A DNA stretch of 64,000 bases from Setoptus koraiensis (GCA_048013815.1 CM106586.1:18352001-18416000); one strand, 5' to 3'; counted from the first letter of the stretch, positions 1 to 64,000 are shown. Notes: generated by a model from the sequence alone, not told the origin. Made by a program: numbers and translations.

Positions 1-1
1 A

Positions 2-8974: not shown

Positions 8975-10328
8975 TGCCCATTCAACAAGACAAATTGTTA
9001 TTATTTATTTTTGTTTGTCACATGTAATACATACATCATCAGCATTGTTAAATTACCATAGTGTTTTCAATTTTATAGTTTGTATCTATCACTCGAAATT
9101 ACTCTCGAAGTAAACCCGTTCAGCATGACACCCATTCCAACCGGATTCTCGTCTTTTTAGATCGTAGGCAGGTTACGAACGTAGATCTTTTTGGCGACCT
9201 CGAAGATGTCTTTCGTTGTCCCGGAAAATGCTAAATTTTCGAAATGTCTAGCCCGAAAAAAATCTATCACTCGCATTCGCCTACATATTTAACCGACCGA
9301 GCGATGGTAAACAGTAATGGTAAACAGGCGTGCGAATTTGTAAAATTATCTCAAAAAAGTGCACTTTTTGCGAAAAATGTTCGTTCAACGAGACTGGCCT
9401 CAGAGTTGTCGCAACATGTGCCATGGCTCACCGAAGAGCACCGGCTTTTTCGGACATTCGTGAATTGTTGACAAATCCATGCTTGCCGTGAATCTGGTTA
9501 TCTAGCAGATAAGTCAAATCAATTCGAGGTTAATTTTCGCTTTTAATGCCAGATTTCGGCAGCGATTCGTTTCGCGTTGACATTACATTTTCAGTCCATT
9601 GGCACTAGCCTGGTCATTTTTATCTGCCATCAACCATAGCTTGTTAGCTGGCAAGCGAGCCACGCTTTGTATCTCTATTGTATATTTGTATGTCCGGTTG
9701 TCGTAGCTTACACGCCGGACACACAAACGGTGGCGCCCAGATGGCGCCTAAATCATAACAAGTCACGGCCAGAGAGGATAAAAGGACGAGGATAAAAGGT
9801 TCGGCTGGAATGGCCGTTATCGGTTGATCTGAAAAGTTGTCAATTTATCCAAGTCAGACAACAATGAATTGTGTGCACCGTGAACAGTGACTGTCGTTAC
9901 AATGCGTATTGTTATTGTTGCAAGTTACGTAATCGTAACGGGATTTTGGCATTTTGTTTGAAAAATAATCAAGTGCGAGCGGCAATTTGAGAAGAAAAGC
10001 TCAATGTGAGCGATTGTTTTCGCGCAACTGGGCGCAATTGTTGGCGATGTTACGCCGATAGCACTGGCCGAACGCTGCTGACCAATCAGCATGACTCAAT
10101 CGAGTAAATCAAACACAGTGACAAATGGCCACTTGGTTGACTTTTTGCATTGGTCAGTGTTTTTGTTAATTAGTTGCTTGTACGGTTTGTTGCTGTTCAT
10201 TGTTTGCTGTCAAATTATTGCCACTCTGGTCTGGGCAATATGGGCAAAATTGTTATTATCAGGGGGCGAGAGTGTGAGCCATTCGAGCTGGGCCAAACTA
10301 ATAAAGTGGGCCCAACAAACAAGCCACC

Positions 10329-10430
10329 GGCCTCTGTTGGCCATGGGGCCTCTGTTGGCCATGGGGCCTCTGTTGGCCATGGGGCCGTCGGGATGTGGAG
10401 CCGTCGGGATGTGGGGCCGTCGGGACGTGG
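10329..10430. repeat. Composite tandem repeat: 18-mer GGCCTCTGTTGGCCATGG x3 followed by 16-mer GGCCGTCGGGATGTGG x3
   Basis: Direct reading. Confidence 0.9.
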
Positions 10431-12678
10431 GGCCGCTGGCTCGAAAGCAACAACTGGCGGCCCGAAAGTTGCCAGAGTGGCGAGATTTTTCGAATCAATC
10501 AAGTGAGTCAACTCTTTATCTGGCTGGCCGCTGCAAATCCCATTACCAGCACACTACGCTTTGTACAGTATACACTGTGTACATGGGGCCCGCACCGTTG
10601 CCTGGCAGCCGGCAACGGAACGTGCCGCTGATGAGTGTGTGGGCCGCAAAACAAACGGGGCCCCAAAACAGCGAATGGCAAATATTAAGTTATGTCACCG
10701 GCACTTGTTTGCGGCGCTTGCTGCTGCTGGCTGCTGCTTGCTGGCGCTTGGGGGTGCTGGCTGGTGCTGGCCGGCGCCCCAGCGCGACTTATTGGCCAGT
10801 GGCCAGTCGCTCAGCAAAAAGTTGTTTGCCGTTCGCACAACGCCAGTCACTGGATACTAGTGGGCCCCACTAATTTACTAACTCGCCGGCCAGCTAACCA
10901 AATGATGATTATGCCCTCCCCCCCCCCAAAATGGCGCAATTTCGTCTCGATCTAGTTTGTCTGGTCTGTGCCAGTGACCGCTCAATCTAAATCTTTCGCT
11001 CTATTGATCTAGGCGCCAGCGCACGCCACTACAATCCAGTCAAGACTAGATACAGGCCGGCCTCTGGCGCGCCGTGGAGCCAACTGAGCAAATATTGGTC
11101 AGTTGGGTCAATATTATCAATCATCTGGCACTCCATTCTATTACGTGGGGCCCGCCGGTTTGCGCCAGTTTGCGCCACTCTGAGCCAGTGCGCGCCACTC
11201 TGAGCCAGTGCGCGCCGGTTTGCGCCAGTGCGCCCCAGTTTGCGCTCGCCCGTCATTGTTGGCCCGTTATTGCTGGCCCGTCGGCCCGGTGGCAGCCATA
11301 TTTGTGCCGGGGCCGGGCCGGCCTATGGGCGCGCCGCGCTGCCAAGTGGGCCGGCAAATATCGGTCACAGTGGCACACTGGCGATTGTACTCTAGTTAAT
11401 AGAGATATCGGCCGCTGGCCGCTAATGGAAAGTGCAGCGTCGGGCCCCAAAGATGACGCGCCTGTCATACATTATTGGATTACTGGCTGGCTGGCATCGA
11501 TGTGTCAAGTCAGTGTTGTTGTCCGCTCGTCGGGGGCAATCAGTTGACTTGTCGCATCATGCAAAGATAGTCTCACTGTGCCAGCGGGCCTCTCCACTGA
11601 GCGGGCCTCTCAGTTGCGGGACCCGCGCTCCGGTCCGAGTGGCACAGCCGCCCGCGCGGTCTGGCCCGGCCGCCCGGTTGGCCGCCCGGCTGCCAGGGGT
11701 CAGCTGGCCAGCCGGGCCTCTTAATGCAATTATATCATTGTTACACAACGCCCATTAGTGCGGCCAGTGGGCGCCAACTGGCCCAGCGACAACAAAGCGA
11801 CACAAGCTCGTCTCGGTGTCTTGCCAAGACAGTCTCGGTGCCCGCTGGCTTATGTCAGCCGGGCGCAAAAGTCAACTGAGCTCGCCCCAAAACTTGGGCC
11901 CTTTCAGTCACTGGGAGCGTCCGGTCGCTGGAAGCGCCAAATCGCGGGCCTCACTGGCCACCAGTGCGGCTGTCGGGTGCTAAAGGGTGCAAAGGGTGCG
12001 AAAGGGTGCATGGTCGGGCCGCTCGCCGCTTATTTGTGCGGTGCGCACAGTTTTGCGCAAACAATCTTCTTGGCGAAATGGATGGCCACGGCGCCGCGAC
12101 CAGAAATCGACCGCCGACGAGCTTGCCAGACCGGCGTGACACTGGACAGCGTAGCCCGGGGCCAGCGCAGCAATTAGTTGCGCACCCAACTTAATGATCG
12201 AGATGAGAGCTCGCTCATTAGCTGCTTGAGTCGGGCTTGCGCTCGCTCAATTGCGCTCGCTCCAGTGACCAGTGGCCAGTGTCCAGTGTCCAGTGTCCAG
12301 TGGCCAGTGGTCAGCCTGACAGTTGCAATGTGACGACGCGTCGCCATATCGCACCAATCTACTTAAGTCGCCCGCTGGGCCGGCTGGCGCTTGTGTCCGG
12401 CCCGCCGGGCGAGCCTGAGCAAACAAGCGAATTGTTTTCAGCGAATTGAGCCGGTCCGATCCGGCCCGATATTGGCTCGCGGGACAGCTCAAGCGTGACC
12501 GATCTGTGTGTCGCTGCAACTATCGTCATGTCCGCTCGCGCTTGCATACCCTCGTGGGCATACCCAAAACACCAAAATAAATAGGTGTTGTGTTTCTCAT
12601 TATCGCGACCGGCCCACCGTGCGGCGCATCGCGCTCGTCAGGATAATAATTACTATTTTGTCGGGCGCGCGCCTGTCT

Positions 12679-12759
12679 ATTCCGTCAATTCCGTCGATTC
12701 CGTCGATTCCGTCGATTCCGTCGATTCCGTCGATTCCGTCGATTCCGTCGATTCCGTCG
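12679..12759. repeat. 9-mer ATTCCGTCG x9
   Basis: Direct reading; explains the SIP/DGI/RRN periodic ORFs. Confidence 0.95.
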
Positions 12760-15396
12760 ACTGTAGTCGGCGGTTGTGCGAGAGCCCGCCAACATCCACG
12801 GTGCACATGTAAACATGCTGCCAGATATACGCTTACGGGGCTTTGAGGCCCCGAGAGGCCCGCTCATCGGAGGCCCGCTCATCGGAGGCCCGATCGTCGG
12901 AGGCTGTGATCAGATGCGGACTAATCAATTAGATTGCACGGCCGGCAGCCGAGTTCACGCGTGAATTTAAACCGCCTGCACAGTTTGCGCAGTGCCCAGA
13001 CCGGCCGCCTGGCGGCTGCCCGTCACCGGCCACAGTGGCCATTGTGGCCAGTTCCGGTCGCGTGGGCACCGGCCGCGACAATGTTGTTGTTGTCGCTGTT
13101 GTTGTTGTTGTTGTTGTTGCTGTTGTTGTGCGTGTGACGCAATTGACTTTGCCACACAAACAACAAATTTGTCAGCCGAGATGTCCGGCCGCCGGCTTGG
13201 CTGCTGTAACTGGGCCGTCGGTATATCACGTTATCTGATCAATGACGCTTTAATTCCCGACGCCGCGGCCGCCGCGGCCGCCGCCGGCCCGATATGCAAC
13301 ACAAAAACTCGCAATGGTCGCTTGTTTCTTTTTGGCGGCGTCATGGTCCGGCAGTCGCTCAAACAGCCGCCATTGTGCAAGAATAACAATCGCATGACAA
13401 ATATTTACTTTGGCCCCCTCGAAGCGGCTCGCCGATCGCCGAGGGACGCATCGTCGTCGGTTTGTTTTGTGTGTCGTCACTGTGTTGTTGTTGTTGTTGT
13501 TGCTGTTGTTGTTGTTGTCGTTGTTGTTGTTGGTGCTGTCGTTGCCGTTGTTGTTGCCGCTGTTGTTGCCGGTGGTTGCCTCTCTGCACACAATCTATCA
13601 AGTGAGCTCCAGCGAGCACCATCTCTGGACAGTATATAATAGACGCTTCGGCCACATAGGTAGCGGCTTAAACCCACACACGCCGGGCGCATTCGTGATC
13701 GCATGCAAACTCGCCCACTACATCGGCACGGGACCCCAATAACAACGAGGGCCGATTTTTTCAAACACGCCAGAGAGTCGCACGTTGTGTTTGTTGTTGT
13801 TGCGACGTGACACAAAATCGCCAGAGAGCGGCCCCCCGAATCAGTTGTTGAGAGCGCTTTGTTTGCTCTCTCGAACTGACCCAATCTCGCCCGACAGCTC
13901 GCACTGGAACGCGTTCGATTAGCGCCCCGGCCTCGCCGATTCGTCACCGAATTGGCGCCCGAATTTCTTCAATTGCTTTCTCGCATTGCGGCTCCGCTCA
14001 CAAGTTGTCAGTATCGGCGGCGCTCGGCTCGCCAGCGGAGCTGTAAGCAATAGACAGGAGCGGCCGGCAGCGCCAGCCCACACCAGCCGCTCATACCCGG
14101 CCCTATAGAGGTGCCCAAAATGACGCACCGCCGCTATGATACCGGGTATGTTGGGCGCCAGTTTTCGAAGCCAGCTTTCGAAGCCAGTTTTCGAAGCCGG
14201 TGGCGGCCGGTGAGCGGGCGGCTTTGCGGCTGCCCGTTCACGAGTGGTCGGCCAATAATCGCGTGGCCGATTATTAGCCGACCGTTCGCGGCGGGCGACC
14301 AGTTTTAGCGCGCTATTCAAGAGCGCAACGAGTCGGGTTCGGGTTTTGAATTTTCAGCGGCTCGTTGGCTGGCAGATTTTTTCATAGGCAGGCGCCAAAA
14401 AGGGGCCCAGATGCCCGCAAGCGCGCACTTGATAATTGCACTGGTAGTAATCAAGCGATGAGTGACGGGCGATGAGTAATGAGCAATAAGTAATGAGTAA
14501 TGAGCTGGGCGATGGGGCCAAATTGAGAGTCTAGTCGCAATCTAATACACGATCTGTGTTGTGGCGCTGGCCGTCGTTTATTTGATGGGCGCTGGTTGGC
14601 TTTTTGCTGCCAGCCACAAGTCGCGCACAACTCGTCTCGCGCTGACCAGCTCGTAATGATGGCGAGTGGTCATATTATAACATGTTATTATATTTTGGCG
14701 AGCCGCCATTCGAGTGCCGCCGAGAGAATCGGCGATTTATCGAGATTTCGCACAGAATCGCATTGAATCGGGCGCTCACATTTTCGCCGGCGAGCTCGGT
14801 GTGACAAGTGAGAAGGGGCGAGCTCGGTGTGGCGAGCGAGAAGGGGCGAAAGTGGGGCCCACGAGTGGCTGATGTATGGCGCCCGGTCGACAGTGCGCAC
14901 CGTGCACCAGAGTGCGCCGGCAGAGTGCGCTGGCAGAGTCGGGTGCACGACGCTGCAAATCGGACACCACTCTCGCCACTTATAATCCCATCTCAGCCGT
15001 AGTGGACAGTGTTGCAGCAAAGCCAATTTTGAGGATAGGTCAGTCAGAGCGACAGGCGCCCGACGAGAGCCCATCGAGAGATATCTCTAAATTCATAAGC
15101 TGGCGCAATTGTACTTTCAAGTTATTGCTATAGGCCACATATTGGATGGGCGCAATATCTCGAAAGTGAGCAGCTCAGTTCGGGCCCAACTGCGGCCCGA
15201 TCGCGGGCTCGCTGCGGGCTGGCCGCTGGGGCCGCGAGCCAGTTCGGCTCGAATGGGGCCCATCTCGTTTGGGCCGAGCCGAGGCGAAGGCGCGACTGAA
15301 GTGTCAGCCACGGCACACGATATACACATGATGTAACAGTAATCTCGTCTCTTTTTATTTGCCAATCCGGTTTGTTCGGTCTGTCGGTGGGGCCGG

Positions 15397-15461
15397 CGAG
15401 ACTCGCTGGCTGGTAGCGAGACTCGCTGGCTGGTAGCGAGACTCGCTGGCTGGTAGCGAGA
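15397..15461. repeat. 20-mer CGAGACTCGCTGGCTGGTAG x3
   Basis: Direct reading. Confidence 0.92.
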
Positions 15462-18221
15462 AATTTGCAAAGAGGCAAAGCTTGAGTTGGATTGGGGCGG
15501 AATATTTTGCGCAATATCTTGGGCAACATTGTGCTGTTTGCGACGACGAGCAAGAGGCCAACGGGCAACTGTGATTGTACATACGCAGTGTACGGCCACA
15601 ACAACAACCTTGCGCACACCTTGAAGATGGGGCCCCAGATAAGAGGGCCTACTTTGGGGCTTGTTTGCAAGCGCTTTTTGTGCTGTGTCTGGCGCTGCCG
15701 GAGTAGTGCAAATTCGAGCAAAAGTACCGGACTTTTGCTCCAACTTGTTTGTGTCTCTTCAATGGCTGCTCTTTTGTGAACTTGACACTGTTACAACATT
15801 ATGATATGTATAAAATGAAAAAATATTAAATGATACATGCATGATATATACATGCAGCTGTATGTTTGACAACGGACATCATTACAAGCTCGTCGCTGCA
15901 ATATCCTCATGCCAGATCCTCATGCCAGATCCTCATGCCAGATTCTTATATGTATCCGATGACAGTTACAGTATTCACATATTTATGTCAACTCGTTGGC
16001 CTCTGCTCGTGTTCGGCTCCACACGAGTAGAGAGGCCAACGAGGGGCACGCGTTTGTTGGTTGTTGGTTGTTGCATCGTTGAGTCGAGGCCCAACATGCA
16101 GTTACGTTCAGCAGAGAGGTCAGAGAGGTCAGAGCGGCCAGAGATAGCCGATGATGGCGTGTTAGTGGCGGCTTAGCAAAACGCGTTTAGCCATTGTGTT
16201 TAGTGTCTCGGTGTCTAGACACATTTCGCTAACACAAAGTCACAAAGTTGTAAAACACTGACCGCAATATGCACAAGCCGCTATTTGTTTGTTGGCGCGC
16301 AAGTCGCCACACGATTCTTCAGAGCCCAACAGTTGCCACGGACGTTCGCATAATTACTTGCTCTGGGCCCCAGAGTCTGGGCTCGCTGGCAAATGTATCA
16401 TACGCTGAAATATACGCATATATTTGCATCTTGCTCTGTGGCCGACACACAAGCTGTCATGCTGTTCATGCTGATTCAGCAATGACCAATCTTTCCGCTA
16501 ATCGGTCAATAGTTAATAAATTAATTAAAAATTAATTAGGCGCGCCATTGCGCCCGCTAATTAATTACTAACTAATTGGCCCTGCATAGTCATGCGAATT
16601 CAATAATTGAACTGGCCGCAAGAGAAACAAAATGATTGAATCGCAGCTCGTCACAAACTCGAATACTTCACACCGCTGCACACATGTAGCCCACATGATG
16701 TGGGCCGTTTCGGCTGTCACGAAATAGCATTTGTGACCTCAATAGCGACCTTTTCAAACAATACCATTTTCGCCCGTTGTGTCCGACATATCGGACATTT
16801 ATTTTATCTTAATTTAAATACAGTGCGCACCACTAACAAGTAGTTGTGACTCACAACTTGTGAGTGATTCAAGTGCGCCCGCACCCGTCCACAGCGACTG
16901 TTTATCAGCCGAGTGTTTATCCGACGAGTATTTATAATAAGCCAGCGCCAATATCCGACGCTGGCCAGCTTTGCAGCGGCCGGTTGCTGTTGTACGGGCT
17001 CATTTGCAATGGTTTATCGACGGTAATTGATTGGAAGCCGAACAGAATTAATTGAGCAGTGGCGGCCGCCAAAAGTGTAACAAAATAAGATAGTTAGTCC
17101 CATGATCTGCGGATTATACCCGCCATCACCGCACCCATGTGATAATCAGAGGCCAGCCGATCTCTAAATGACATCATGTTCACACTTAATCCCGGCCGGC
17201 ATCTCACCTGCGGATCGCGCGTTCGGATCGCGCGTTCGGATCGGGCGTTCGAATCAAGTGCTCAGATCGAATGAGAGGTATTAGGTATCAAGTGTTGGGT
17301 ATTAAGTTTGCGTATTACGTATTGGCTGTAGCTGGTAGCCGAGGGGGCACAACAAGATAACAAGAGCACGACAACAGTGTTAACACTGGATCCAATGGCT
17401 TGGGGCGCTCAAAAAAGGGGCCCCACTAGACGTCGGTTGTTTGTGCCGGCCGGCTAAGCTCGACCACCTGGGAACAAGTGGCAGCCATACAAGCCAGTTG
17501 GTGGTTAAAATTGGCCGATAAATTGTTTTTGTCATCAGCTGACAATGTTGCTGGTGGGCATGTTGTTGGCCTGAACTGATTTAGACTGACTCACTGGGGC
17601 CCCGTTGGCTGGCGCAAACTGTTTACAATTCGTTGTGGTCCGTTCGCTCGGGACCCCAAACACACGCACAAACAGTTGGAACATACCGACAGAGATACGG
17701 ACAGAGGCAAGCGGCAATCAGTGGTGAAAAGTTGCCGATGACTAACAACAACTATTCACTTTGTTGTTATTTCTAATAGTGTCGCACGTCCGTGGCATTA
17801 CATAACCCCGTTTGAGCTGTGTACGCCAGTGCTATATGTGGCAGTGATATCACCAATACGCCAGTGCTATATATAACACTGCAGTATTGGTGCAAGTGAG
17901 TCGCGAATGTCGCTATAATCGGCTGTTCCGCTCACTTTGCACAGTGTGCCCGCTATTTGCCTACGATTACGTGATTTAAATACCAGACGACCGATTGTGC
18001 GGCGCGCCAGCCACCGGCAATACTTAATAATAGATGTGTGTGTGTGTGTGTGTGTATTATGTAATAAGTCTGCAGTAATCTCTCGGTGTGATCTGGGCCC
18101 CATTTCTGGTCATGGCCACTGGTAATTGGCCGCACTGTGTTACGTAACAACTCACACACACAATGGAGGAAATCTGGACAAATCTTGCGTGAGACTGTCA
18201 CCAGAAATGGCCGCACAGCAC

Positions 18222-18305
18222 TGACGTTACCAGTGACGTTACCAGTGACGTTACCAGTGACGTTGCCAGTGACGTTACCAGTGACGTTACCAGTGACGTT
18301 AGCAG
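18222..18305. repeat. 12-mer TGACGTTACCAG x7
   Basis: Direct reading; two units carry a variant base. Confidence 0.95.
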
Positions 18306-19567
18306 GTCCAGCCAGTGGGGCCACCTTTGCGCCCTTGGCTGGATTGGCGTGATTTGGCACATCTAGCCAAGGCATTGATCCCTGGCTGTTGGCGCACAGC
18401 AGCATTTATGGTATGCTGTGCATTTATGGTATGGTCAGGGGCCCAAAAGAGAGTTGTGACAACAAACAAAAGATGCCAGCCGTCATTGTATGCTCAACAA
18501 TGTCAAGTGAGCACGCACTTTCTCAGTTGGGCCCCAATGAGTGGCATTTAAGCACAAACTGGGGCCAATTCAATAGCTATCTATCAGTGGTGCAACAACG
18601 ACCAAATTCATGTTGCGTAAGTGGCGCCAGCAGCGACGTAATGATCATGAACAAAAAGAATTGGCCCCCACCCCCACACACACACTGTGAGAAATAACAG
18701 AGAAATAACCCCCTCTGCCCCCCGCACACACGCACACACACGCACACACTGTGTCAACGTAATTTCTATACACACACACACACACACACACACGCACCAA
18801 GGCAAGCTCGTTCAAGTTGGCGGCCGGCTGAAGAAGCTCGGCGAGCCAATGAAGGCAAAAATGAAAGTGAATAAGCTCGCGCTTGCACGCGCCTAAGCCC
18901 GTCCTAATGTCTAATGATGATCAACGGAATAGAGCGATACAAGCGCCCCCTCGCCCGGCCCCCAGATACTGTTGCGAGCAGACGCAAATGTCAGGAAAAT
19001 GTTTGAGAAGTGGGGCCCCACTTTGTAGCAACAACAGAGTATAGAAAGATGTTTATTATTGTGAATTATCATGCTTTGATGCACAGCAACAACGGCAACA
19101 ACAGCGCCAACAACAGCGCCAACAACAGCGCCAACAACAGCGCCAGCCACTGGCCTTGCTCACCGCCAATGCGCCCCCATTTGTATCATTTGCGGCCTCA
19201 TCCATTTAATCAAGCCACTGGCGAGCCCCCTTTCCTTAATGGTGCCCATAATGATATCCGGTTGGCCGGGCCAATCAAGCGGCCATTGTTGCCGCTGTCG
19301 TACACCACATATACATAGGCATATATGTGAGAGTATGATATTGAGAGTTGAGATTTCTACAATCTAGAATTAGCACAAAGCCGCTGCTGCTGCTGCACAA
19401 ACTATAAGTATGCCATTCATGATAATAATGATTTTTCGCGTTGTCACAATGTAGCCCCTACATTGCAGAGTCATGCCAGGCCAAGACACGAAAACGTCAG
19501 GCCAAATCTCGGCTGCCTCGGCCTACCTGACAGATGAACAGAGGCACCGTCCAATAGAGATCTGTTG

Positions 19568-19650
19568 GAATTCCGACAGATTTCCAATTGAAATTCCGAC
19601 AGATTTCCAGTTGAAATTCCGACAGATTTCCAATTGAAATTCCGATAGAT
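19568..19650. repeat. 23-mer GAAATTCCGACAGATTTCCAATT x3.5
   Basis: Direct reading. Confidence 0.9.
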
Positions 19651-51094: not shown

Positions 51095-51301
51095 GCCTTC
51101 AGCAGCGCACGCTGACTCTCAAGAGGTCGCGAGCTGCAACTAATGGCGGCGCCCCGACAACAACGACGCAGCCACCGAGCTCGTCCACGACGGCCCCATC
51201 GGACGGCGCCCACAAGCAACAGCAACAACAGAAAGCTAATAATATCAATAATAACCCCGTTTGCGAGCCAAGCAAATTGATGACCCGCGAATGCAAAAAA
51301 G
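51095..51301 (+). CDS. miple: miple-like coding exon 2 (GLQQRTLTLKRS...VCEPSKLMTRECKKG)
   Basis: aatag|GC acceptor in phase 1 and AAAG|gtaagt donor; completes R.LTLK...C......C of the PTN/MK repeat. Later exons were not found in the window. Confidence 0.82.
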
Positions 51302-53658: not shown

Positions 53659-53708
53659 GATAAAATAACGGGCCCATCAATGCCCAATGATGGGCCCGTT
53701 ATTTTATC
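53659..53708. other. Perfect 21-bp inverted repeat with 8-nt loop
   Basis: GATAAAATAACGGGCCCATCA / TGATGGGCCCGTTATTTTATC. Confidence 0.95.
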
Positions 53709-53861
53709 CCCCAGCTCACTTATTAATATATCCATCAATTTGCGCGATCGTGTTTCTCCGTTTCTATCTTTATCGTCTCTGTCTTGTCTTGTCTTGTCAG
53801 CTTGCGCGCACAACAAATATCGTAACACGCTGACAAGCCGATCGTGTGTACAAAGTGCATT

Positions 53862-53902
53862 GGCCCCGCTGGCAAGCTCACGGTGAGCTTGCCAGCGGGG
53901 CC
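53862..53902. other. 41-bp palindrome (20-bp perfect arms, 1-nt centre)
   Basis: GGCCCCGCTGGCAAGCTCAC-G-GTGAGCTTGCCAGCGGGGCC. Confidence 0.95.
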
Positions 53903-54599
53903 CGTCGGCCGACAGCGATGATGCAATGCAGCTGTCGTTGTTGTTGTTGTTGTTGTTGTTGTTGTTGCTGCTGCTGGCTCGGGCCGGCACGACAGCGGCA
54001 GCGGCCCGGATCAATCAATATCCGTCGATTAGAGTGAATGATCCACTTTTGGTACGGGCTCGGCGAGCCACTCGAGCCGCTCGAAACGCCGCTCGGGCCG
54101 GCAAACGAAACGGGCAACATTCATTATTGTTATTGCTATTATTTTATTGCGCACACACACATAGAACGGCAGGTGTGGTGCGTCGTTTATATGGTCGCCC
54201 AATGAACGTTCATCGCTCAATTGGGCCAGCCAGACCGGAAATTGGTCGTGTGCGTGTGTGTGTGTGTGCGCGAAACAATGCTACGTTACGTAACGCATAA
54301 TTGGCCCACTTTTGTGCTCCACTGTTTGTGACTGCTGGCTGCCTGCCATAAGCCAGTGATCGCTCGATCGTTCATTATCCGCCCGCTGGCCGCACGGGTA
54401 TGCGGTGCACGGTGCACCGCGGTGTGGCTGCACCATACTGCGCTGACCATAGCGCACATCCGCACACTGGGGCCCGCTCGGCTCGCCAGCCAGCCGCCAC
54501 AAATATTCACACATTATCCACATATGTGTGAATCGGCACACGATTCACCTATTGTCCGCACACCGTTCACATGTTATCCCCACATTATCCGCACAGTAT

Positions 54600-54674
54600 C
54601 CACACATTGTCCACACATTGTCCGCACATTGTCCGCACATTGTCCGCACATTGTCCGCATATTGTCCGCATATT
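54600..54674. repeat. 11-mer CCGCACATTGT x7
   Basis: Direct reading. Confidence 0.92.
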
Positions 54675-57600
54675 CATCCGCTCGGCAGCCCAGTTGCTGG
54701 CCATAAATAAAGTGCAAATGGCCGCCTTGTGATACCCACACGCGTACACCCGTGCCGCCAACTATGCCCACGCGATACCCTGCTGGCCCCAATGGCGCTC
54801 AATCGGCCGCCGATAGCCCGTGCAACTCGTGCCGTTCGTGGGCGACATCCGCCAACGCTGTCCAGCCCTGGCCATAAACGGCGACACACGAAGCGAGAGA
54901 TGTCACAGGCTGACGGAACCAGCCAAGAGGCAAGCGAAATAAATAAAAACAATAATCTTTTCGCTTCATACTGACAGCCGACTAATGATGCGACACACAC
55001 ACACACACACACGCACCGTTGCGACAGTGGCCCCGCCAATGGGTCCAGTCGGGATTTATTCCGTTGATTCCGACATCCACGGGCCGCGTGTGCCTCGGGT
55101 GTCGCCGGAGTGGCCGACGCTCGGTGTGTGAACGGGAGCGCGGGGACGGGACCTCAATTGCAAGACCCGACAAGACGTGATCGTCGAGCCGGGCGCTGGT
55201 GGCCCCCCTTTTGCTCGCCTATCCTACGGCGGCCAGTTGTGTCGGCGCACAGTGGAGCTCGGGCCGGAATTAATGAATATTAATAACCTCTCAAAGCGTG
55301 CGCATGATTCCCGTTCCATTGCCCGGTGTGCGTGTGTCTGTCTGTCTGTCTGAGGCTGCTGTAGGGGGGGGGGGCTCTATTGTAGATGCGCCATAACGGC
55401 CCCTAATGATGGCGGATCAAATATTTGAGAGGCATTGAAAAAGGTTAAACAACAACAATCGCACACAATTAGCACACCCCAGTGGCGCCCCCAGTCAGGT
55501 GGCGTGACTTGCACACGGCGCCCCCCAATGGCGCGCACTGTGCATCAGCGGATATTGTGTCGCGCTCTTGCGGCCGCCTCTGTCACTTGAGCGACACCTG
55601 AATGAATTAATTCGGGGGGCGCCTCCGGCTGGCAGCCAGACAGTTGTCTCGCTGCCAGCGAGTCGCTCGTAATGAATAATAATAATGCCACGACATTAAG
55701 TAGCCCAACCTGGCCCCAATTGCGACTCAAAACTCAACCTGCTCCACCTCTGAGCGGACCTCAGTGTACCTTTGGGCAGTTAGAGCCGGGCACGCCCAAG
55801 CGAACCTCGGGCCGGCCGGAGCGTCACTTGGGCCGCCCAACCGTGCTGGGCGTGCCTCTGCGGCGGCCCGGCCCGAGTGGCAATTGGCCGCGCCGCTCAT
55901 TATGGCTTTGCTGTCGAGTCGCGTGCCTCGTGGAGTGGATAATGTCTCCTCGAGTTGATAGTGTCAGACTCGAGTCGGGCCGGGCCGGGCCGCGCCGCGC
56001 ACCGTCAACGCCGAGCCGCACTGTCTCGAGAGTGAAGAGAAGCCCGCAGCAGCGCCGTTTGTGTAGATCGGCCAATCGGATATGGAGGCGGCCGCTGAAT
56101 TGATGTGGCCGGATAGCCGGGCAGCCACCGGCGCGGCCATTGAGCCGTGCAGCCGCCGCGGCTATCTGGCCGCACATCTCTACAGAGCCAGAGCGAGCCA
56201 CAGAGAGCCAGAGAGGGCCAGAGAGGGCCAGAGAGAGGCATCTCCGGAGCGGCAAGCGATGGGCCGTCTAGATAGGCCGGCGCGGGGATATCGGCGCGGA
56301 TGATGGATGATGGGCGGCCGCCACTGGGCCATCGGGCCATCCGCGGGGCTGTCGGGCTTTCGGGCTGTCGGGCGAGCCATTGGGCGAGCGAGCCCGCCAA
56401 ACCGCTAACCAGCGAGCCCGGCAGCCCGACAGCGGGCGCCGGTTGTGCTCCGGTGGCGCCCGCACCCGCGGCTTATCTACATGAGTGCAGGTGGCGCCGG
56501 GCCGCGCGCAGCCAGCGTCTAGAGGGGCCCCGGCGGGGCTCGATGCAGATAGCGGCCAGCGCGATATTATGCGCGAGTCACGGCACAGCCGCTGCCGCTA
56601 CAAAGCAGCCGGTTGTTGTATGTTTAAAATGTCGCGGGGCGCCGCGCTGATATTATTGTGACGCCAACCATCAACTAGATAAATGTCGGGCGCGCCGGCG
56701 AGCAGCGAAAGTTTAATATCCGTTTTGGTGTCGCGAGCGTTATCTAAACGCGCCAGCGAGCCAGCGACGAGGCGCTTATCTTGGCGCGCGTTCATTCATT
56801 GGCAAGACTGGCTGGCCGGCCAGTTTGACAGCGACTACAACAATGACTAAACGCGCTGGCAAGCGACTTGTGACAAGCTCCGTTTGACAACAGACTCGCC
56901 GGCCCGCTGGCTCGCCAGCGGGCCCCACAAGCCGTCTAAGCGGCCAGCATCGGAACAGTTGCTCGCTGGAGCGTCTTTGGCGCAGTCCGGCGCTTTGGAG
57001 CGGCTAAATCGACTCGCTGCGAATTCGTTGGGCTAAGTTTGCTTGCCCGTCGGCCGTCATGTGCAGCGCGCGATTGCACAGCCGGCACAGACGCCGACAG
57101 AGTGACTCTGTGCCCAATTGAATCAAATATTCAAATTAGGCGACTCAACATTAGCGCCGCCGACTAATGTTGGCCAGCCGCACGAGCAGCGGCGACAACA
57201 TCGACCGACGGCATCGGCACAACATCGACCGACGCCAGCGTTCGGGCCGAGAAGCTCCCAGCCGCGGCTCGAGCGGCAGCGGTGCACAACGAACCGTTGC
57301 GCCGACCGGGCGCCCACTGGCGCTGCCGTCGCCCGAACCGGGGCCCCAGTGAGTGACTAACACACAGTGTGTGGCTAACGCAGTGTGTGACTAACACAGT
57401 GGGCCAGGCAGAGATTCGCGGGTGCAAATAAACAAAGAGCTGCTCTGTTTCCAGCCTGTTTCACATGAGTTGTCTCGCGCGCGCTGTTTGTCCACCGCGG
57501 CATTTATAGCATTCATGGGCCGCCGGGACCCGACTCGCCGCCCGGCCAAGCTGGCGCCGGATGCGCGCCGGCTGACCGGGCCTCTGCTGCTTGTTTCAAA

Positions 57601-58714
57601 GGCGGTGTGCGCGCGCGACTATAATTAGCGATCCGGCAAACGCGCTCGCGGCAATGGCGCTCGCTGATACCAACACGGGTACGTAATATGTAGTTACGTA
57701 ATACGCTGCGGCGATGCCGCAGCAGCGCCAACAACGGCAACAGCAGCAGCAACAACAACGGCAACAACAACGACAACAACAGCGACAACGGCGCCAACAA
57801 CAACAACGCGGCACATTGCGCAATGCGTATTATTTAGTGCGTTGGGTGCATTTTGTAGTGTTTGCACCAACGAGCCGTTGGTGCAAATTGGCTGGGCCCC
57901 ACGGTGCGCTGCGCAACGACCAACTAACAACTAATCAACTCGCCAGCTGGTGGCCAGCAGCGCAAATAATTAGGTGACGACATGCCAGATACGGCATGCT
58001 GTTGCGTAATGCTGGCGATCGCGTCACGATGAGCGCTTGTCGATTGGCCGCGAGTGCTCGCCACTCCACGTGTGCGCACGCCACGCGCACACACGCGACG
58101 CACAAGCTGGGCACCAGCGCGGCCCGCTCACCTGGCCGGCCGGCCCGACGGTCACCTGGTGCGCTATGCCATGGCGGTTGCGGGGCCCGCTCATATCCCG
58201 CGCGCACCAGAGTGAGTGCGGGGGTGTCGTCGGTGGCACCGACTCGTCGGCACCATTCAATCGGTAGAGCCGGCGACCGACGCACTGGACGAATCAAAGC
58301 TCGACACGAGTTTTGACCACTCCGGCCAAAGGTCTTATCTGGCCACGAGTTGCCCATTGTGCGTCGCGCAATAAATCACTGCCCGACGGGCGCGCTCTGG
58401 CTTCGCTTGCGACTCGGGCCGCCGTTTCGCGCGCCCGTGCTGACCAGTTGCTGACCGTTGCAAATGTCCGGCTGGGCGCACCGCTATACGCACCGGCCAC
58501 ACTGTGCACGGCACACTGGGTAGGGCGCACAATTGGCGAGCCCACCCGCCACCGCTAACAAAAGAGTGTGAGTGGCCTTTTGATTTCGGCCCCCTGTCTG
58601 GTCCATTGTGACAAGACCTCGTTCGCGCTGGCTCATCAATAATCCGGCCGCGTACATTGGCTGCCCGGCGCCCGCGCACATTGGCCCGTCCGACGGCAGC
58701 AGCGCCCGCGCGTC

Positions 58715-58784
58715 GTAGCCCGCCGTAGCCCGCCATAGCCCGTCGAAGCCCGCCGTAGCCCGCTCTAGCCTGCCGTAGCCCGCT
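58715..58784. repeat. 10-mer GTAGCCCGCC x7 (degenerate)
   Basis: Direct reading. Confidence 0.85.
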
Positions 58785-60910
58785 GTTGTAGGCGCAACGC
58801 GGCCGGCGCAATGTATCCAATGTTTGCGTTTGCATTGGCCTTGTCAATTGCGACCCTCCTACCAGTCACTGCCCGTCCAGTCGCGGGGCCGGCCCCGTCG
58901 GGCCGGATCCAGACAGCCCAGCGGGCTGTTTCGGTGCCGATCGGAGCCGGCCGATTGGCTGTGGCGCAGCCGGCCCGCGGCCCGGGCAGCTGCAGGAGCT
59001 CATCAGCGGCGTGTTTGGTGATGCATGAGTCGTCGGGCAGCAGCGGCAGCCCGAAAAGAATCGCAATCCCGTCGCAAGCCGCTCATCCCGCTCATCCCGC
59101 TCATCCCGTTCATCCCGTTCATCCCGTGGCGGGGCCCCGATTGCCGCGAACTGGATATTGCAAACACTGGCTCGCAATTGTCAACTTAACCCAATTGCTC
59201 TCGACTAGAGCGACTACCGCAATTGTGTGTGTCACGAGGCGGCCCCCGTGACGATACTATTGTGACACAATGGTCGTAATTGTAATATTGGCTGTATTTT
59301 ATTTGTATGTAAATGTAACTGTCGCTGAGGCGCTTTTGGTCCAAACTCATTGTGTTGTTTGTGCTCAATGAGCCAATGGCCTCGCTGGTGCGGCTGCCAA
59401 TTATTAGATTGGTGCCCAGCAGCGCGGGCAGCCGCGCCAAATGGCACCAGCAATATGTAACTTTGTGCGCCGTCGAGCTGGCTGGCCGCCGGCTGGCGCG
59501 GGGCCCCAATTGATGGATGCACAGGCGACCCAATTTTGGCTTTTGGATTCTTTGTGCTGCGCCGTCACTGCATTACTGAATAATACAGTCTGTATTTCGA
59601 TGGCACTTTGTGCCTGTTGTCTCGAACCAACCAAATCTCGAACAGATTTGTGTGCGCGCCGGAATCTCGGAATGCCGGCTGAGCAACCAGAAGTGGGGGG
59701 CCTTTGTTTGTGCCAGTTTGTGCGTGTGTGCCGCGACTAACGGGACTCCCATTGTGGGGCCGGGGACAAAAATGATGGTGATCACGCGATCAGCGCCATC
59801 AAGCGCCCGACTGGCGCACAGTGGCGCCGGCCCGACACACGGTGTAACCGGCGCCCCCGGTGGCCGCTGTTCGCCGGATCGGCACGTCGCGCGCCCCGGC
59901 GAGTTCGCGAGCGGCACGCCGGCAATGCCAACGGTGCCCCCTCCCGCGCCGGTTGCCCGCGCCGGTTGCCCGCGCCAGTTGCAACCGGCGACTGGCGCCC
60001 CCGGCAAACACTCGCGCGACACCCAGTTTTGGGGCCAACGAGCAAAAGACGATCATCATCATTATATCGTGATCATCATCATTTTGCAATGCCCATTGTG
60101 CTGCGCCGCGCCGCGTCAAACAACAATCCGTTCGACACGAGTAATTTGGTCGCTTTGTTGCTGTTGTTGGCTCGAGCTCTGAAGCGTGAGCGCGGCCGCA
60201 CTTAGCGGGGCCCCCGTTGCACAAAATCCGACCGCTGTCGGGCCGACACTGACACAGCAGCAACTGTGCCACTGCACAGTGTGCACATATTGTATACACA
60301 TGTATGTATATAATGACCGCACTCTCTGGCCGCTCTGTCAATGCCCGGCGTGAGCGGCACAGGTTGCCCACTGACAGTTCAATTGCGCAACGCACTTGAG
60401 CGCGCACTTTTATGCCGACTCTCGTCACGCGAGCGACCGTTGTGCAGCTCGTTACGTCAACAGGGTTTTATTGCGACACGGGCTTGCTGTAACTATACTG
60501 CTGCAGCATACGGACATCACTATTATGCAACGTTCGCTTGTCCGTGCAGCACTATTGTCCATCTGCGCCCATCTGTGCCGATCTGTGCCGCGTCGCGACA
60601 CAACTGCACCCAGTTTGCCAGCGCCCGCCACTGGCAAACTCAGCGGCGGGCCCCAACGTCCCGCGAGGGGCCCACTGGCAGGCGAGCGGCCAGTGACGCA
60701 ACCAGACCTGACGCGTGTGTGTGCTTCGATTAATGTTGACGGGCCGTCGCCATCGGTGCACGCTCTCATTGTGGGCCCCAGTCCGGCCCGGCCCACCCCG
60801 ATCAGCTGACCAGTTGTTTCTCGCGCTGGCAAGCTAGTGCCATGATGAGTGCCGGCCGGCTGGCTGAATGGCCGACTGGCCACTTCTAATGAGCCTCCAG
60901 CTCAACATAC

Positions 60911-61131
60911 ATTAGACGTGATATTACGCAACACACACACACTGGACGTAATATTACGCAACACACACACACACTGGACGTAATATTACGCAACACACAC
61001 TGGACATAATATTACGCAACACACATTAGACGCGATATTATGCAACACACACTGGACACAACACAACATTGCGCAACATGCATTGGACATAATATTGCGC
61101 AACATAAATTGAACGTGATATTACGCAACAC
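60911..61131. repeat. Minisatellite of 8 units of about 24-32 bp (ACTGGACGTAATATTACGCAAC(AC)n)
   Basis: Direct reading; units vary by point changes and AC-tract length. Confidence 0.9.
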
Positions 61132-62043
61132 ACTCGCTCGCTGGGAATGGCCACTGGCCAGTGGCTGGCGCAAGTGGCCGCACTGGGCCAAGTGCCACTG
61201 GGCACGCTGGCCAGCGTGTGTGTGTGCGTCGAACCGAGCCGGCGCCGACAGACGGTCGCCGTCTAGACAATAACTTGCCACTTGTCATTTGTGTCCTTGT
61301 TATGGTTGTTGTCGTCGGCGTTGTCGTGGTTGCCGTCGCTGTCGCTGACAACAGCGGCCAGTGGGACAACAGCGGCCAGTGGGACAACAGCGACAGCGGC
61401 CACGGGAGTGACTTGTTCGCGGCTTGTTAATCAAGCCCGCGACAACGCGGGCGCCAAGACGTCAGCGTTGTCGCTCGACGGGTGGCCTTGCCGGCAGCCT
61501 TGTTTATGTGTGACAAATTTCGGCGCCACTGCCGCCGACACGACAACTGTTAATAACGGGCCCACAATGACCGGCCATACAAATGGCCACTCGACAATGC
61601 GCCGCCAATTGAATGGCCATTTGAATGACCAGTGGCCAGTTGGCCAGTTGGCCAGTTGGCATTCAAATGGGCGCCGTTGCCAGAGGCGAGATTGAGTGGC
61701 GAGCGGCCAACTGGCGCGCGCCAAGTAATTGTGCCGCTACGTTACGTAACGCCACGCGAAAGTGCAAGTGTATCACAAACTGTGCGCTCTATAGAGTGGA
61801 CAGTGGCGAGTGTATATGGCCGGTGTATATGGCCGGTGTGTATAGCTGTGGCAGTAATTGAAATGAGATTATCGCCCTGCAAACAGACCATAGATGCCCA
61901 TATATCACGTATTGTGCCGCGCCGCTATGCTGTGCACTGCAGTGCAGAGCATGATACAGCGCTGCTCATTTGCGCACATTGTGCACATTGGGCACCGGTG
62001 TGCACCGTTGCGCGCCCTTGTGCACGTGCTACGTGCGCCCACA

Positions 62044-62095
62044 CGGCGTAGTGTGGCCAGTCGGCGTAGTGTGGCCAGTCGGCGTAGTGTGGCCA
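62044..62095. repeat. 18-mer CGGCGTAGTGTGGCCAGT x3
   Basis: Direct reading. Confidence 0.9.
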
Positions 62096-64000
62096 ATTGG
62101 TTTGGACTCAATTTGCTTTATTGCATTTCCATATGTTGCCAGGGTTTTTGTCGGTAGTGTGTGCGCCGCACAATAATAAACTCGTTCGTCACAAACTGAC
62201 CATACTGACCGCTCGCCGCACAACAAGTGCCGCCAGTATGGCCGCCGCTTCGGCCGCCGCTGTTTAAAATCCCGGGTGCACTATGCGCTTGTAACAGACC
62301 GTTTGTTTGCCCGTGCGTCACGCGGGCATGTGTGTTATTTGTTGTTCGTTGTTTATTATTCGGGGCTCGTTGCCCGTTATTAGATCCCGTTATTTGTTGT
62401 GTGCGGGGCCTCAACGCACCGGCCACTTGAGCAGATTACGCAACATTGAACAAGTGTCGCACAATTGAGCCCAATGTGTCGCCAACCACTGAGAGCCACT
62501 GACCACTGGTCAGCGCTGGTCAGCGCTGGCCAGTCTTGCATTGTCGCTGTCGGATAATGTTGTGCGCCCGTTTAGTTATTACATAACGATATAGTTATTA
62601 CGCAACTTGCCAGTGTGACACAAGCCAGCGCGACACAAGCCAGTGCGACACAAGCCAGTGTGTTTGTTGGTTGTCACTGTAACACTGTTTGATTGATCAT
62701 TCCTGTTTGCGCCGTTTGCCATTAGTGGCGCCGTGCATCATTGGTGCACCTGCACCTTCGCCAACCTATCATTGGTGGCCACCGGCCAGCGCTGCCTACC
62801 GGATAAATTGATCAGCTGCCGGCGACCATTAGCTCGCCATCGAGCTGATCAATTTATCGATATCAATATATTCGATATTGTTGTCAGTGTTACTTGGTAG
62901 ATTGCTCACTCGGTAGTTGGTGGTGTCGGCCGGTTAGCGGCGCTCTTTCTTCGATTTGTCAATTGATATCATATCAACATGCTTGCTGTAATTCACTCTT
63001 GGCCCTCACCACTGCCAGCGCCACCGCAAACGCCTTCCCGGCCGGGCCCCAATCACTCCAATTTACTCACAAAGCGTGTCAACTGTGGGCCTGTCAGTCA
63101 CAGCTGTTTGGTGCAAAGTGTCACTCTTCTGTTGTATGCATTCTTATGTAACATGCATATATTATGCAAATAGTGCGTTTATAAATAAACTTGACGCTGC
63201 TTACAAATAAATTGGCTACTAATTGACAATAAGCGAACCTTTGTCAGCTCGTCGTGTCCACTGGCCGCGAGCAACACGAGCACTCGTGTCGCTTATCCAT
63301 TCAGTCGCCTCTTGTGGCGCTAATTAGCTGCCGACAACAAACCTGTCACCAGCTAATTAGCTTCATCATTAGTGGTTGATTAGCAGCCCACTATTAGTGC
63401 AATTTGTGCAATTACCGGGCACCAATAGTCTATTGGCAATAGAGCACGGCGTAGAGTTGGCAAGTATCGTTACAACTTGCAACCAAATCACCATGTGCAG
63501 GTGGCCCCCTCGCGGCCGTTTGTGCAAGCTCGTTTAGTTGAGTCTCGAGTAGCCGACTCACTGTGGTTTATGGCATAAACTTAACTAATCTTGCAAGTAA
63601 CAAAGTATCACAGCTCGTCGTAAGGGGTACATAAAATGTTTTAAATTAACCCTTTTCTCTCACTCGCTTGTCTCGACGAAATGAAGTTAGCCAATGCTCA
63701 TCAGTCGTTGTCGGCCTCGTTGGGGCGCCCGAGCGTCGACGGCGATAATTGCTAGACGCTCGCACGTCGATCAGCGTCATCCGGCAGGCATGAGATACAT
63801 GTGTCAAGCAAAGATACACGCTGTCTCCGGAGCGTCATTGGCTCGCCCGACAAGCCAACAGCGGCAAGCTCCCATCGACGAGCTCCCATCGACAAGCTCC
63901 CATCGCCAATCCAACCGCGACAAGCTAGCAGCGACAGGCTCCCGTGGACAGGCTATCAGCGACGAGCTCCCATCGACAAGCAAGACAGTTTAAACTTGGT

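What the first reader, a model, noticed from the sequence alone, without database searches (positions are those of the whole stretch)
10000..63450. Many unrelated perfect hairpins, confined to the large GC-rich non-coding zones
By eye I found about 20 inverted repeats with stems of 10-23 bp and short loops: 14246, 15992, 21099, 21363, 33385, 34798, 36971, 37104, 37442, 52393, 53353, 53413, 53659, 53862, 56102, 56901, 62802 and 63320, among others. At least seven have perfect runs of 13 bp or more. For 42 kb of random sequence and spacers up to 30 nt, the expectation is about 0.02 for 13-bp arms and about 1e-6 for 20-bp arms. The hairpins share no sequence with each other and show no target-site duplications, so they are not one MITE family. 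They are nearly absent from the gene-dense parts (1-10 kb, 41-50 kb). Inference: either a pervasive template-switch or Pol-theta-type templated-insertion process that perfects quasi-palindromes, or a selected layer of intronic RNA structure (small-RNA precursors, ADAR substrates, compaction of giant neural-gene introns). This is the best candidate for an undescribed system in the window.
Basis: partly seen in the sequence, partly recalled or inferred. Interest (0 to 1): 0.8.

Follow-up and report, generated by a model that had tools for sequence, protein, structure and literature searches.

The report
Short hairpins from local DNA copying
The many short perfect hairpin sequences are real and far exceed chance, but they are the minority partner of an even larger excess of short side-by-side duplications, so they look like scars of a known DNA-copying error rather than a new RNA or genetic system.

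Summary
Observation confirmed. The window has 38 perfect inverted repeats (IRs) with arms >=10 bp and spacer <=30 nt, against about 2 in dinucleotide shuffles; 10 versus 0 at >=13 bp. A 5th-order Markov null that keeps GGCC/GGGCCC content gives 1.8 against 31 in the GC-rich zones. Contigs from three other sequencing runs carry the 53.3-53.9 kb hairpins unchanged and at single-copy depth. They are not a transposon family.

Short direct duplications are about three times commoner than hairpins (88 versus 29 loci). Both lie in the same zones, have similar arm lengths and fall to background within 100-300 nt. About 10% of the GC-rich zones is short tandem array. Complement-only repeats, which no copying mechanism makes, sit at chance. 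Hairpin edges are sharp: pairing just outside the arms is at chance, with no G:U excess. Most stems are too short for small-RNA or ADAR substrates, and Rfam finds nothing.

Best reading: footprints of short-range templated copying errors, accumulating where selection allows. Intron-rich DNA of other chelicerates also shows a 3-12-fold IR excess, so the hairpin excess is only 2-3 times denser here; the tandem duplications are more unusual. One-step origin could not be shown, because no close enough relative or polymorphism was available. Other first-stage notes describe the same pattern elsewhere in this genome.

The parts
10001..40900 (.). GC-rich (about 50%) zone with no recognisable coding sequence. 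Dense in short tandem duplications (1.4 arrays/kb of period >=7, 9.6% of bases) and holding 13 perfect IRs >=10 bp.
48601..64000 (.). GC-rich (about 56%) zone with no recognisable coding sequence. Tandem arrays cover 9.9% of bases. It has the highest IR density, 18 perfect IRs >=10 bp (1.17/kb).
8098..8127 (.). Perfect IR, 13-bp arms, 4-nt spacer, in the gene-dense part.
14246..14283 (.). IR, 16-bp arms with one mismatch, 6-nt spacer.
15992..16043 (.). Perfect IR, 13-bp arms, 26-nt spacer.
21363..21411 (.). Two overlapping perfect IRs (13 and 12 bp) interleaved with direct copies of the same short motifs.
32253..32278 (.). Perfect IR, 12-bp arms, 2-nt spacer.
33125..33160 (.). Perfect IR, 12-bp arms, 12-nt spacer.
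33385..33420 (.). Perfect IR, 13-bp arms, 10-nt spacer. The arm core is itself a palindrome, so this is equally a direct duplication.
34798..34855 (.). IR with a 16-bp perfect core (34805-34847), extendable to about 22 bp with one bulge.
37104..37146 (.). Perfect IR, 13-bp arms, 17-nt spacer.
37442..37485 (.). IR, 13 bp perfect, or 18 bp with one mismatch and an 8-nt spacer.
52833..52872 (.). IR, 15-bp arms with one mismatch, 10-nt spacer.
53353..53391 (.). Perfect IR, 12-bp arms, 15-nt spacer. Present unchanged in contigs of other runs.
53413..53458 (.). Perfect IR, 10-bp arms, 26-nt spacer.
53659..53708 (.). Strongest hairpin: 21-bp perfect arms with an 8-nt spacer (24 bp at 96% with a 2-nt spacer). 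Single-copy depth, unchanged in runs X3, X4 and X5.
53862..53902 (.). 41-nt near-perfect palindrome: 20-bp arms, 1-nt spacer. Unchanged in runs X3 and X4.
55628..55659 (.). IR, 15-bp arms with one mismatch, 2-nt spacer.
56901..56924 (.). Perfect IR, 11-bp arms, 2-nt spacer.
57861..57887 (.). Perfect IR, 12-bp arms, 3-nt spacer.
59943..59998 (.). Three tandem 13-bp copies followed directly by inverted copies of parts of the same unit, so direct and inverted copying occur at one site.
61570..61715 (.). Complex nest of imperfect IRs around an 8-bp tandem array.
62802..62858 (.). Perfect IR, 16-bp arms, 25-nt spacer.
63319..63361 (.). Perfect IR, 12-bp arms, 19-nt spacer.

Best explanation
The hairpins are neutral or nearly neutral mutational footprints, not a functional system. 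During replication or break repair, a nascent 3' end sometimes dissociates and re-primes a few to a few dozen nucleotides away. If it re-primes on the same strand out of register, the result is a short tandem or near-tandem direct duplication. If it folds back on itself or switches to the complementary strand, the result is an inverted copy, born as a perfect hairpin with a short spacer. This covers intra-strand fold-back or snap-back priming, inter-strand template switching, quasi-palindrome extension, and polymerase-theta-type templated insertion. These products accumulate in the large GC-rich non-coding zones, because indels there are tolerated, and are purged from the compact coding parts. 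Shown here: the excess, its locality, the parallel and larger excess of direct duplications, the sharp edges, single-copy status, and presence in other sequencing runs. Inferred: the enzymology, the one-step origin, and whether the rate is higher in this genome than elsewhere.
For: (1) IR excess is 17-fold at >=10 bp and over 100-fold at >=12 bp against dinucleotide shuffles, and about 17-fold against a hexamer-preserving Markov null. (2) Four-symmetry control with non-periodic arms >=10 bp: direct 182, inverted 34, mirror 17 (residual low complexity), complement-direct 3, against about 2 expected for each. Only the two symmetries that templated copying can produce are truly enriched. (3) Match density per nt of spacer drops about 30-fold for IRs and about 13-fold for direct repeats beyond 30 nt, and reaches background by 100-300 nt. 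(4) Direct and inverted loci share the same zones; IR arms fall within the 10-40 bp range of the direct repeats, which have the longer tail. Tandem arrays of period >=7 cover 8-10% of the GC zones. (5) Edges are sharp: only 1.44 of the next 6 outer positions pair, against 1.5 by chance, as expected for copies born perfect. Of the 22 highest-scoring IRs, 15 are perfect, 5 have one mismatch and 2 have three. (6) Some sites show direct and inverted copies of the same unit side by side (59943-59998, 21363-21411). (7) The only indel polymorphisms seen in 5.6 kb are gains of a tandem unit (GCGCC x2 to x3, and CT in a CT run), so the direct-copy process is still active. (8) Published experiments show this triad of simple-repeat indels, short duplications and template-switch palindrome creation or elongation in rad27/FEN1-deficient yeast (PMC5677150). 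Template switching is documented to create perfect hairpins in one step (PMC5453318, PMC8794818).
Against: No ancestral state could be reconstructed. The only relative found is too diverged to align in non-coding DNA, and the sampled individuals show no variation at any hairpin. One-step origin is therefore inferred, not observed. IR loci are not closer to direct-duplication loci than random placement predicts, so the shared mechanism rests on parallel distributions rather than on joint events. The comparison loci from other species are mostly gene-dense, so the claim of a higher rate here is weak for hairpins: 0.63/kb against 0.24/kb in tick introns and 0.37/kb at a spider locus. Transcription and small-RNA data were not available.
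Confidence: 0.7

Rival explanations
1. The hairpins are a selected layer of RNA structure in introns or non-coding transcripts, such as small-RNA precursors, ADAR substrates or intron compaction.
For: The stems are thermodynamically strong. Two have arms of 20-21 bp. The zones may be introns of neural-type genes: first-reader note s1-321361 names a miple intron, and ORF 39159-40034 gave a weak Ig-like lead.
Against: There is no Rfam match at gathering thresholds. Thirty of 34 non-periodic stems are 10-13 bp, too short for Drosha/Dicer or ADAR substrates by established knowledge. Several have 1-2-nt spacers that cannot form RNA loops without opening the stem. Pairing does not extend beyond the perfect arms, and G:T edge pairs number 3 of 34 against about 5.7 expected. 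Direct duplications, which are useless for folding, are three times commoner with the same distribution. The hairpins share no sequence or common architecture. No RNA run could be identified.
Confidence: 0.07
2. The hairpins are palindromic protein-binding sites, such as dimeric transcription-factor or insulator sites, or cruciform-forming elements, enriched because the zones are regulatory DNA.
For: The zones look like large regulatory or intronic deserts in an otherwise compact genome. Template-switch IR expansion near promoters has been linked to transcription-factor binding in yeast (PMC13100816, abstract only). GGCC-containing motifs recur in several arms.
Against: Arms of 12-21 bp with spacers from 1 to 26 nt and unrelated sequences do not fit any single binding-site geometry. 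Each hairpin sequence occurs once. GCCAG and GGCC richness is a general compositional feature of the zones and is not confined to hairpins.
Confidence: 0.08
3. The hairpins are remnants or termini of transposable elements (MITE-like foldback elements) that are dispersed elsewhere in the genome.
For: The same genome is reported to hold an abundant hairpin-rich TIR transposon (note s1-303148, not checked here).
Against: The window has no dispersed repeats. Contig word depth across the 53.2-54.0 kb hairpin cluster equals single-copy depth even at an 80% likeness threshold. At 25-58 bp in total, the hairpins are far smaller than MITEs.
Confidence: 0.03
4. The excess is just the ordinary background of eukaryotic non-coding DNA. 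The same universal mutational process runs at an ordinary rate and is merely more visible here because the zones are long and unconstrained, so nothing is specific to this genome.
For: Tick intronic DNA shows 0.24 IR loci/kb (12 times its shuffle), an unnamed soil arthropod 0.29/kb, and a spider 0.37/kb. The literature states that perfect short IRs are enriched in many genomes (PMC5941160).
Against: IRs >=12 bp are 2.5-10 times denser here (0.32/kb against 0.03-0.14/kb). Direct-duplication loci are 3-19 times denser than in the seven comparison loci that have any (1.90/kb against 0.10-0.58/kb; one locus has none), and tandem arrays cover about 10% of bases against at most 3.7%. Other first-stage notes describe the same pattern, plus larger inverted duplications, across this genome (s1-314322, s1-314293, s1-318871, s1-303151; unchecked).
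Confidence: 0.3

Closest known systems
Short-range template-switch mutations and quasi-palindrome correction or elongation (Ripley model; Loytynoja & Goldman 2017, PMC5453318; Monttinen & Loytynoja 2022, PMC8794818; rad27/FEN1 yeast, PMC5677150)
   Same: Inverted copies lie within tens of nucleotides of their source. They are perfect at birth with sharp boundaries and unrelated sequences, and they occur alongside simple-repeat indels and short direct duplications.
   Different: Here only the end products in one genome are seen. No ancestral or derived pair was available, so individual events were not called. The density in these zones is higher than in the comparison loci.
Polymerase-theta-mediated end joining with templated insertions (my own knowledge of the Drosophila, C. 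elegans and mammalian literature; only review PMC7407515 was seen, in a search list)
   Same: It produces both direct and reverse-complement copies of flanking sequence, typically 5-30 nt long and taken from within about 100 nt. Snap-back synthesis gives very short loops, as at 53862, 56901 and 32253.
   Different: Junction microhomology and the accompanying deletions cannot be assessed without the ancestral sequence. The presence of POLQ in this genome was not checked.
Cryptic simplicity and tandem-repeat turnover of non-coding DNA (slippage-like processes; from my own knowledge, Tautz et al. 1986 and Sinha & Siggia 2005)
   Same: Non-coding DNA is crowded with many different 2-5-copy arrays of 9-32-bp units at 90-100% identity.
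   Different: Those descriptions concern direct repeats. The inverted fraction (about 1 in 4 loci here) needs strand switching or fold-back, not simple slippage.
General enrichment of perfect short inverted repeats in genomes (PMC5941160; detectIR, PMC4237412)
   Same: Perfect short IRs exceed compositional expectation.
   Different: Those surveys did not tie the IRs to a parallel direct-duplication excess in GC-rich non-coding islands of a streamlined genome.

Membership tests
MITE / foldback transposon family | Multiple dispersed copies sharing sequence | tested here: not met
   There are no non-periodic matches >=20 bp beyond 300 nt, and self-blastn finds only local hits. The 53.2-54.0 kb cluster is at single-copy depth.
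MITE / foldback transposon family | Terminal inverted repeats flanked by target-site duplications, element size about 80-800 bp | tested here: not met
   Whole structures are 25-58 bp. Pairing and similarity stop at the arm edges.
miRNA / hairpin small-RNA precursors | Stem of about 22 bp or more with a loop, and a match to a known family | tested here: not met
   Rfam gives 0 matches. Only 2 of 34 stems reach 20 bp, and one of those has a 1-nt spacer.
miRNA / hairpin small-RNA precursors | Discrete small-RNA reads from the arms | not testable with these tools
Conserved structured RNA | Compensatory substitutions across species | not testable with these tools
   The only relative (L001) does not align in non-coding DNA.
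Template-switch / fold-back copying products | The inverted copy lies close to its source, with frequency falling steeply with distance | tested here: met
   Density per nt of spacer is 1.73 at 0-30 nt, 0.057 at 30-100 nt and 0.02 at 100-300 nt, against a background of 0.003-0.009.
Template-switch / fold-back copying products | Copies are born perfect with sharp boundaries and then decay | tested here: met
   Of the 22 top IRs, 15 are perfect and 5 have one mismatch. Outer flanks pair at the chance level.
Template-switch / fold-back copying products | The derived allele differs from the ancestral allele by one multi-nucleotide event explained by a reverse-complement copy | not testable with these tools
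   There is no alignable outgroup and no polymorphism at any hairpin.
Polymerase-theta templated insertions | Both direct and reverse-complement copies of nearby flanking sequence are present | tested here: met
   Direct 182 and inverted 34 against about 2 expected; complement-only at chance. Mixed direct and inverted sites occur at 59943-59998 and 21363-21411.
Polymerase-theta templated insertions | Microhomology at the junctions, and POLQ present in the genome | not tested
   This needs ancestral sequences and the whole genome.

The most novel reading that the evidence does not exclude
This streamlined mite genome has a genuinely elevated rate of short-range templated copying, direct more than inverted. 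The cause could be, for example, altered flap processing (a FEN1-like defect) or heavy reliance on polymerase-theta-type repair. On this reading the process acts across scales, from 10-bp hairpins to the 0.3-0.7-kb inverted duplications that other notes report as capturing promoters. It would be what builds and renews the GC-rich non-coding islands against the genome's strong deletion bias.
Probability: 0.25. Interest if true: 0.6.

Novelty: new member of a known kind. Interest (0 to 1): 0.3.

Why it matters
If the rate of local templated duplication is really raised in this lineage, the genome would be a natural model for two questions. One is how template switching and fold-back synthesis generate new non-coding sequence, hairpins and possibly regulatory rearrangements. 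The other is how a genome under extreme streamlining still keeps 15-30-kb non-coding islands. As it stands, the finding mainly shows that a striking by-eye pattern is statistically real but has an ordinary mutational explanation. It also warns that perfect hairpins in this genome should not be read as RNA genes without expression or conservation evidence.

Tried and rejected
(1) Comparative test of origin. I fetched the only near relative (L001, whose DPH6 protein is 94% identical). It is syntenic only downstream of DPH6, its non-coding DNA does not align, and it is AT-rich, so it is uninformative for hairpin origin.
(2) Polymorphism test. Contigs of four runs were laid on 52300-57950. Three runs are the same species with almost no variation, and the fourth holds only microsatellite matches. 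No hairpin is polymorphic.
(3) Co-localisation of hairpins with direct-duplication loci: not different from random placement.
(4) Break-site motif. GCCAG/CTGGC and GGCC are common in duplicated units but are simply common in the zones. They do not stand out against a Markov expectation.
(5) GC of duplicated units against zone GC: direct arms are slightly GC-richer (0.555 against 0.518) and IR arms are not (0.522). The difference is too small to explain the GC-richness.
(6) Coding content of the GC-rich zones. The long ORFs scanned in or bordering these zones have no significant Pfam domain; the only hit was below cut-off (New_glue, 49864-50358). An atlas search of ORF 39159-40034 gave only weak Ig-like leads.
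(7) RNA evidence: no RNA run was identified.
(8) Literature on eriophyoid genomes (PMC7738191, PMC11920263, bioRxiv 2026.08.24.746826) contains no mention of hairpins, inverted repeats or tandem repeats in the searched text.
(9) Mirror repeats at first looked strongly enriched (179 against 2). This collapsed to 17 residual low-complexity cases once arms with period <=6 were removed.


Full report
WHAT THE WINDOW IS. The window alternates between two kinds of sequence. The compact gene-dense parts are AT-rich (1-10 kb and 40.9-48.6 kb, GC 0.37-0.43). The two large zones are GC-rich (10-40.9 kb, GC about 0.50; 48.6-64 kb, GC about 0.56, locally 0.63).

Recognisable genes:
- RpL14 (332-841, minus strand)
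- a lipase-domain ORF (4643-6595)
- diphthine-ammonia ligase DPH6 as a single 252-aa exon (40947-41705)
- an ACBP-domain ORF (42629-44023)
- GOLD-domain and cuticle-protein (Chitin_bind_4) genes, identified by synteny with a relative

The nearest named DPH6 homologues are acariform mites at 54-57% identity. The long ORFs scanned in or bordering the GC-rich zones have no significant Pfam domain. Other notes of this scan call the genome intron-stripped and that of a tiny plant-feeding mite assembled in two pieces. This fits the two roughly 24-Mb chromosomes reported for an eriophyoid (PMC11920263). The taxon is an inference and I did not verify it.

- Dinucleotide shuffles in 1-kb blocks give 2.0, 0.13 (>=12) and 0 (>=13).
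- A 3rd-order Markov simulation of the GC-rich zones gives 2.0 against 31 observed there.
- A 5th-order simulation, which keeps hexamer content including GGCC and GGGCCC, gives 1.8 against 31.

Seventeen of the 18 listed coordinates are recovered. 56102 is only a weak interrupted pairing, and 52393 is low complexity.

The hairpins are not assembly artefacts. Contigs from runs X3, X4 and X5, which come from at least two studies, carry 53353-53902 without change. Word depth there equals single-copy depth even at an 80% likeness threshold.

Tandem Repeats Finder lists 111 rows, mostly 2-5 copies of 9-32-bp units at 90-100% identity, almost all in the GC-rich zones. I counted all four possible symmetries of short-range repeats with the same rules. 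After removing arms with period <=6, each class has a chance expectation of about 2 at >=10 bp:
- direct repeats: 182
- inverted repeats: 34
- mirror repeats: 17, all residual low complexity
- complement-direct repeats: 3

So only the two symmetries that a polymerase copying a nearby template can create are truly enriched. Direct copies dominate, at 88 loci against 29 IR loci in the zones.

Both classes are strictly local. Per nucleotide of spacer, IR matches fall from 1.73 (0-30 nt) to 0.057 (30-100 nt) and 0.02 (100-300 nt), against a background of 0.003-0.009. Direct matches fall from 4.57 to 0.36 and 0.04, against 0.004-0.011. Self-blastn finds no longer or dispersed repeats. Arrays of period >=7 occur at about 1.4/kb and cover 8-10% of the zones.

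PROPERTIES OF THE HAIRPINS.
- Arm lengths decay roughly geometrically: 18 at 10-11 bp, 12 at 12-13, 2 at 16-19 and 2 at 20-24.
- Spacers spread over 1-30 nt.
- Of the 22 best-scoring IRs, 15 are perfect, 5 have one mismatch and 2 have three.
- Just outside the perfect arms, pairing is at chance: 1.44 of 6 positions against 1.5 expected.
- G:T edge pairs are not enriched, at 3 of 34. The stems are discrete blocks with sharp ends, not eroded long stems or wobble-tolerant RNA helices.
- IR loci are not closer to direct-repeat loci than random placement predicts.
- Some sites do show direct and inverted copies of one unit side by side (59943-59998, 21363-21411).
- Density rises with GC across the window (Spearman 0.64 for direct loci, 0.39 for IR loci). 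The 48.6-64 kb zone is significantly denser in IRs than the 10-40.9 kb zone (binomial P = 0.006).
- The only indel polymorphisms among the sampled runs are gains of a tandem unit: GCGCC x2 to x3 at 52547, and CT in a CT run at 53547.

HOW UNUSUAL IS IT? I fetched the DPH6 locus, with up to 10 kb of flank on each side, from eight other chelicerates or soil arthropods and ran the same counts.

| Measure | Comparison loci | Window GC-rich zones |
|---|---|---|
| IR loci per kb | 0-0.37 (tick introns 0.24, 12x its shuffle; spider 0.37, 3x; unnamed soil arthropod 0.29, 7x) | 0.63 (16x its shuffle) |
| IRs >=12 bp per kb | 0-0.14 | 0.32 |
| Direct-repeat loci per kb | 0-0.58 | 1.90 |
| Tandem-array coverage of bases | at most 3.7% | about 10% |

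The gene-dense parts of the window have 0.17 IR loci/kb.

An excess of short perfect IRs over composition is thus a general feature of arthropod non-coding DNA, as the literature says (PMC5941160). The hairpin excess here is only 2-3 times stronger. The tandem duplications are the more unusual component. The comparison loci are mostly gene-richer, so this baseline is rough.

MECHANISM. The most economical reading is short-range templated copying error. A nascent end re-primes nearby, either in direct register or, after fold-back or strand switch, in inverted orientation. Direct re-priming gives a tandem or near-tandem duplication; inverted re-priming gives a hairpin.

Three published lines fit this:
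- Yeast lacking Rad27/FEN1 shows this triad of simple-repeat indels, short duplications and template-switch events that create or elongate palindromes (PMC5677150).
- Template switching explains mutation clusters in primates (PMC5453318).
- Template switching can create perfect RNA-type hairpins in one step (PMC8794818; abstracts).

Very short spacers (1-3 nt at 53862, 56901, 32253 and 57861) fit fold-back or snap-back priming. Spacers of 10-26 nt fit switching between strands. I cannot tell replication-fork switching from polymerase-theta-type repair synthesis. The enrichment in non-coding zones is most simply explained by purifying selection against indels in the compact coding parts. A real regional difference, for example recombination-associated repair in GC-rich DNA, is possible but untested.

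WHY NOT RNA STRUCTURE? Rfam finds nothing. Thirty of 34 stems are under 14 bp. Several loops are too small. There is no wobble tolerance at stem edges. The hairpins share no sequence or architecture. The same zones are even richer in direct duplications, which cannot fold. Expression could not be examined, so this reading is disfavoured but not excluded for the two longest hairpins (53659-53708 and 53862-53902).

WHAT COULD NOT BE DONE. The decisive test is polarising individual events with a close outgroup or with polymorphism, and it was not possible. The one relative in the databases has 86% nucleotide identity in DPH6 coding sequence and no alignable non-coding DNA. It also lacks a GC-rich zone next to DPH6, and its non-coding DNA is AT-rich. 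The sequenced individuals are nearly identical. Genome-wide statistics and a repair-gene inventory need the whole assembly.

VERDICT. The RNA-layer half is unsupported, and 'undescribed system' is not warranted. Other first-stage notes report the same pattern elsewhere in this genome (s1-318871, s1-314322, s1-314293), along with larger inverted duplications (s1-303151 and others). This keeps open, at roughly one in four, the more interesting possibility that this lineage has a raised rate of such copying that shapes its non-coding islands.

Noticed in passing
window 10001-40900 and 48601-64000 versus 1-10000 and 40901-48600: Non-coding zones are much more GC-rich (0.50-0.63) than the coding parts (0.37-0.43), the reverse of the usual pattern. 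In the close relative L001, the DNA around the same genes is AT-rich throughout (0.32-0.43) and has no GC-rich zone next to DPH6.
   Followed up: partly
window 40947 upstream, versus L001:1-5200: Synteny with the relative holds downstream of DPH6 (ACBP-like, GOLD and cuticle-protein genes) but breaks upstream. The relative's upstream genes have no match anywhere in the window, and the window instead has an ORF (39159-40034, minus strand) followed by 30 kb of GC-rich DNA.
   Followed up: partly
window 52547 and 53547: Run X3 carries three copies of GCGCC where the window has two. Runs X3 and X4 carry an extra CT in a CT run. These were the only indel polymorphisms in 5.6 kb. SNP diversity is very low, at about 6 sites in 5.6 kb across three runs.
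   Followed up: yes
window 57719-57808: A CAA/CAG-type repeat attracts contig word depth of 10^4-10^5 in all four runs, including one (X7) that otherwise lacks this locus. It is a ubiquitous microsatellite and not informative.
   Followed up: no
window 39159-40034 (minus strand): A 291-aa ATG ORF with no Pfam hit. Protein-atlas features give only weak leads (scores 0.69-0.84) to arthropod Ig-domain proteins. If it is a first exon, the 10-39 kb GC-rich zone could be its introns.
   Followed up: partly
window 60903-61133: A roughly 8-copy array of a 26-32-bp unit. Each unit contains a 12-nt perfect palindrome next to a CA run, which produces several of the listed IRs by tandem repetition rather than by separate inverted-copy events.
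   Followed up: partly
window 4643-6595: A 650-aa single-exon ORF in which only the C-terminal 100 residues match the lipase family. The N-terminal 500 residues include simple repeats (5921-5975) and have no domain hit.
   Followed up: no
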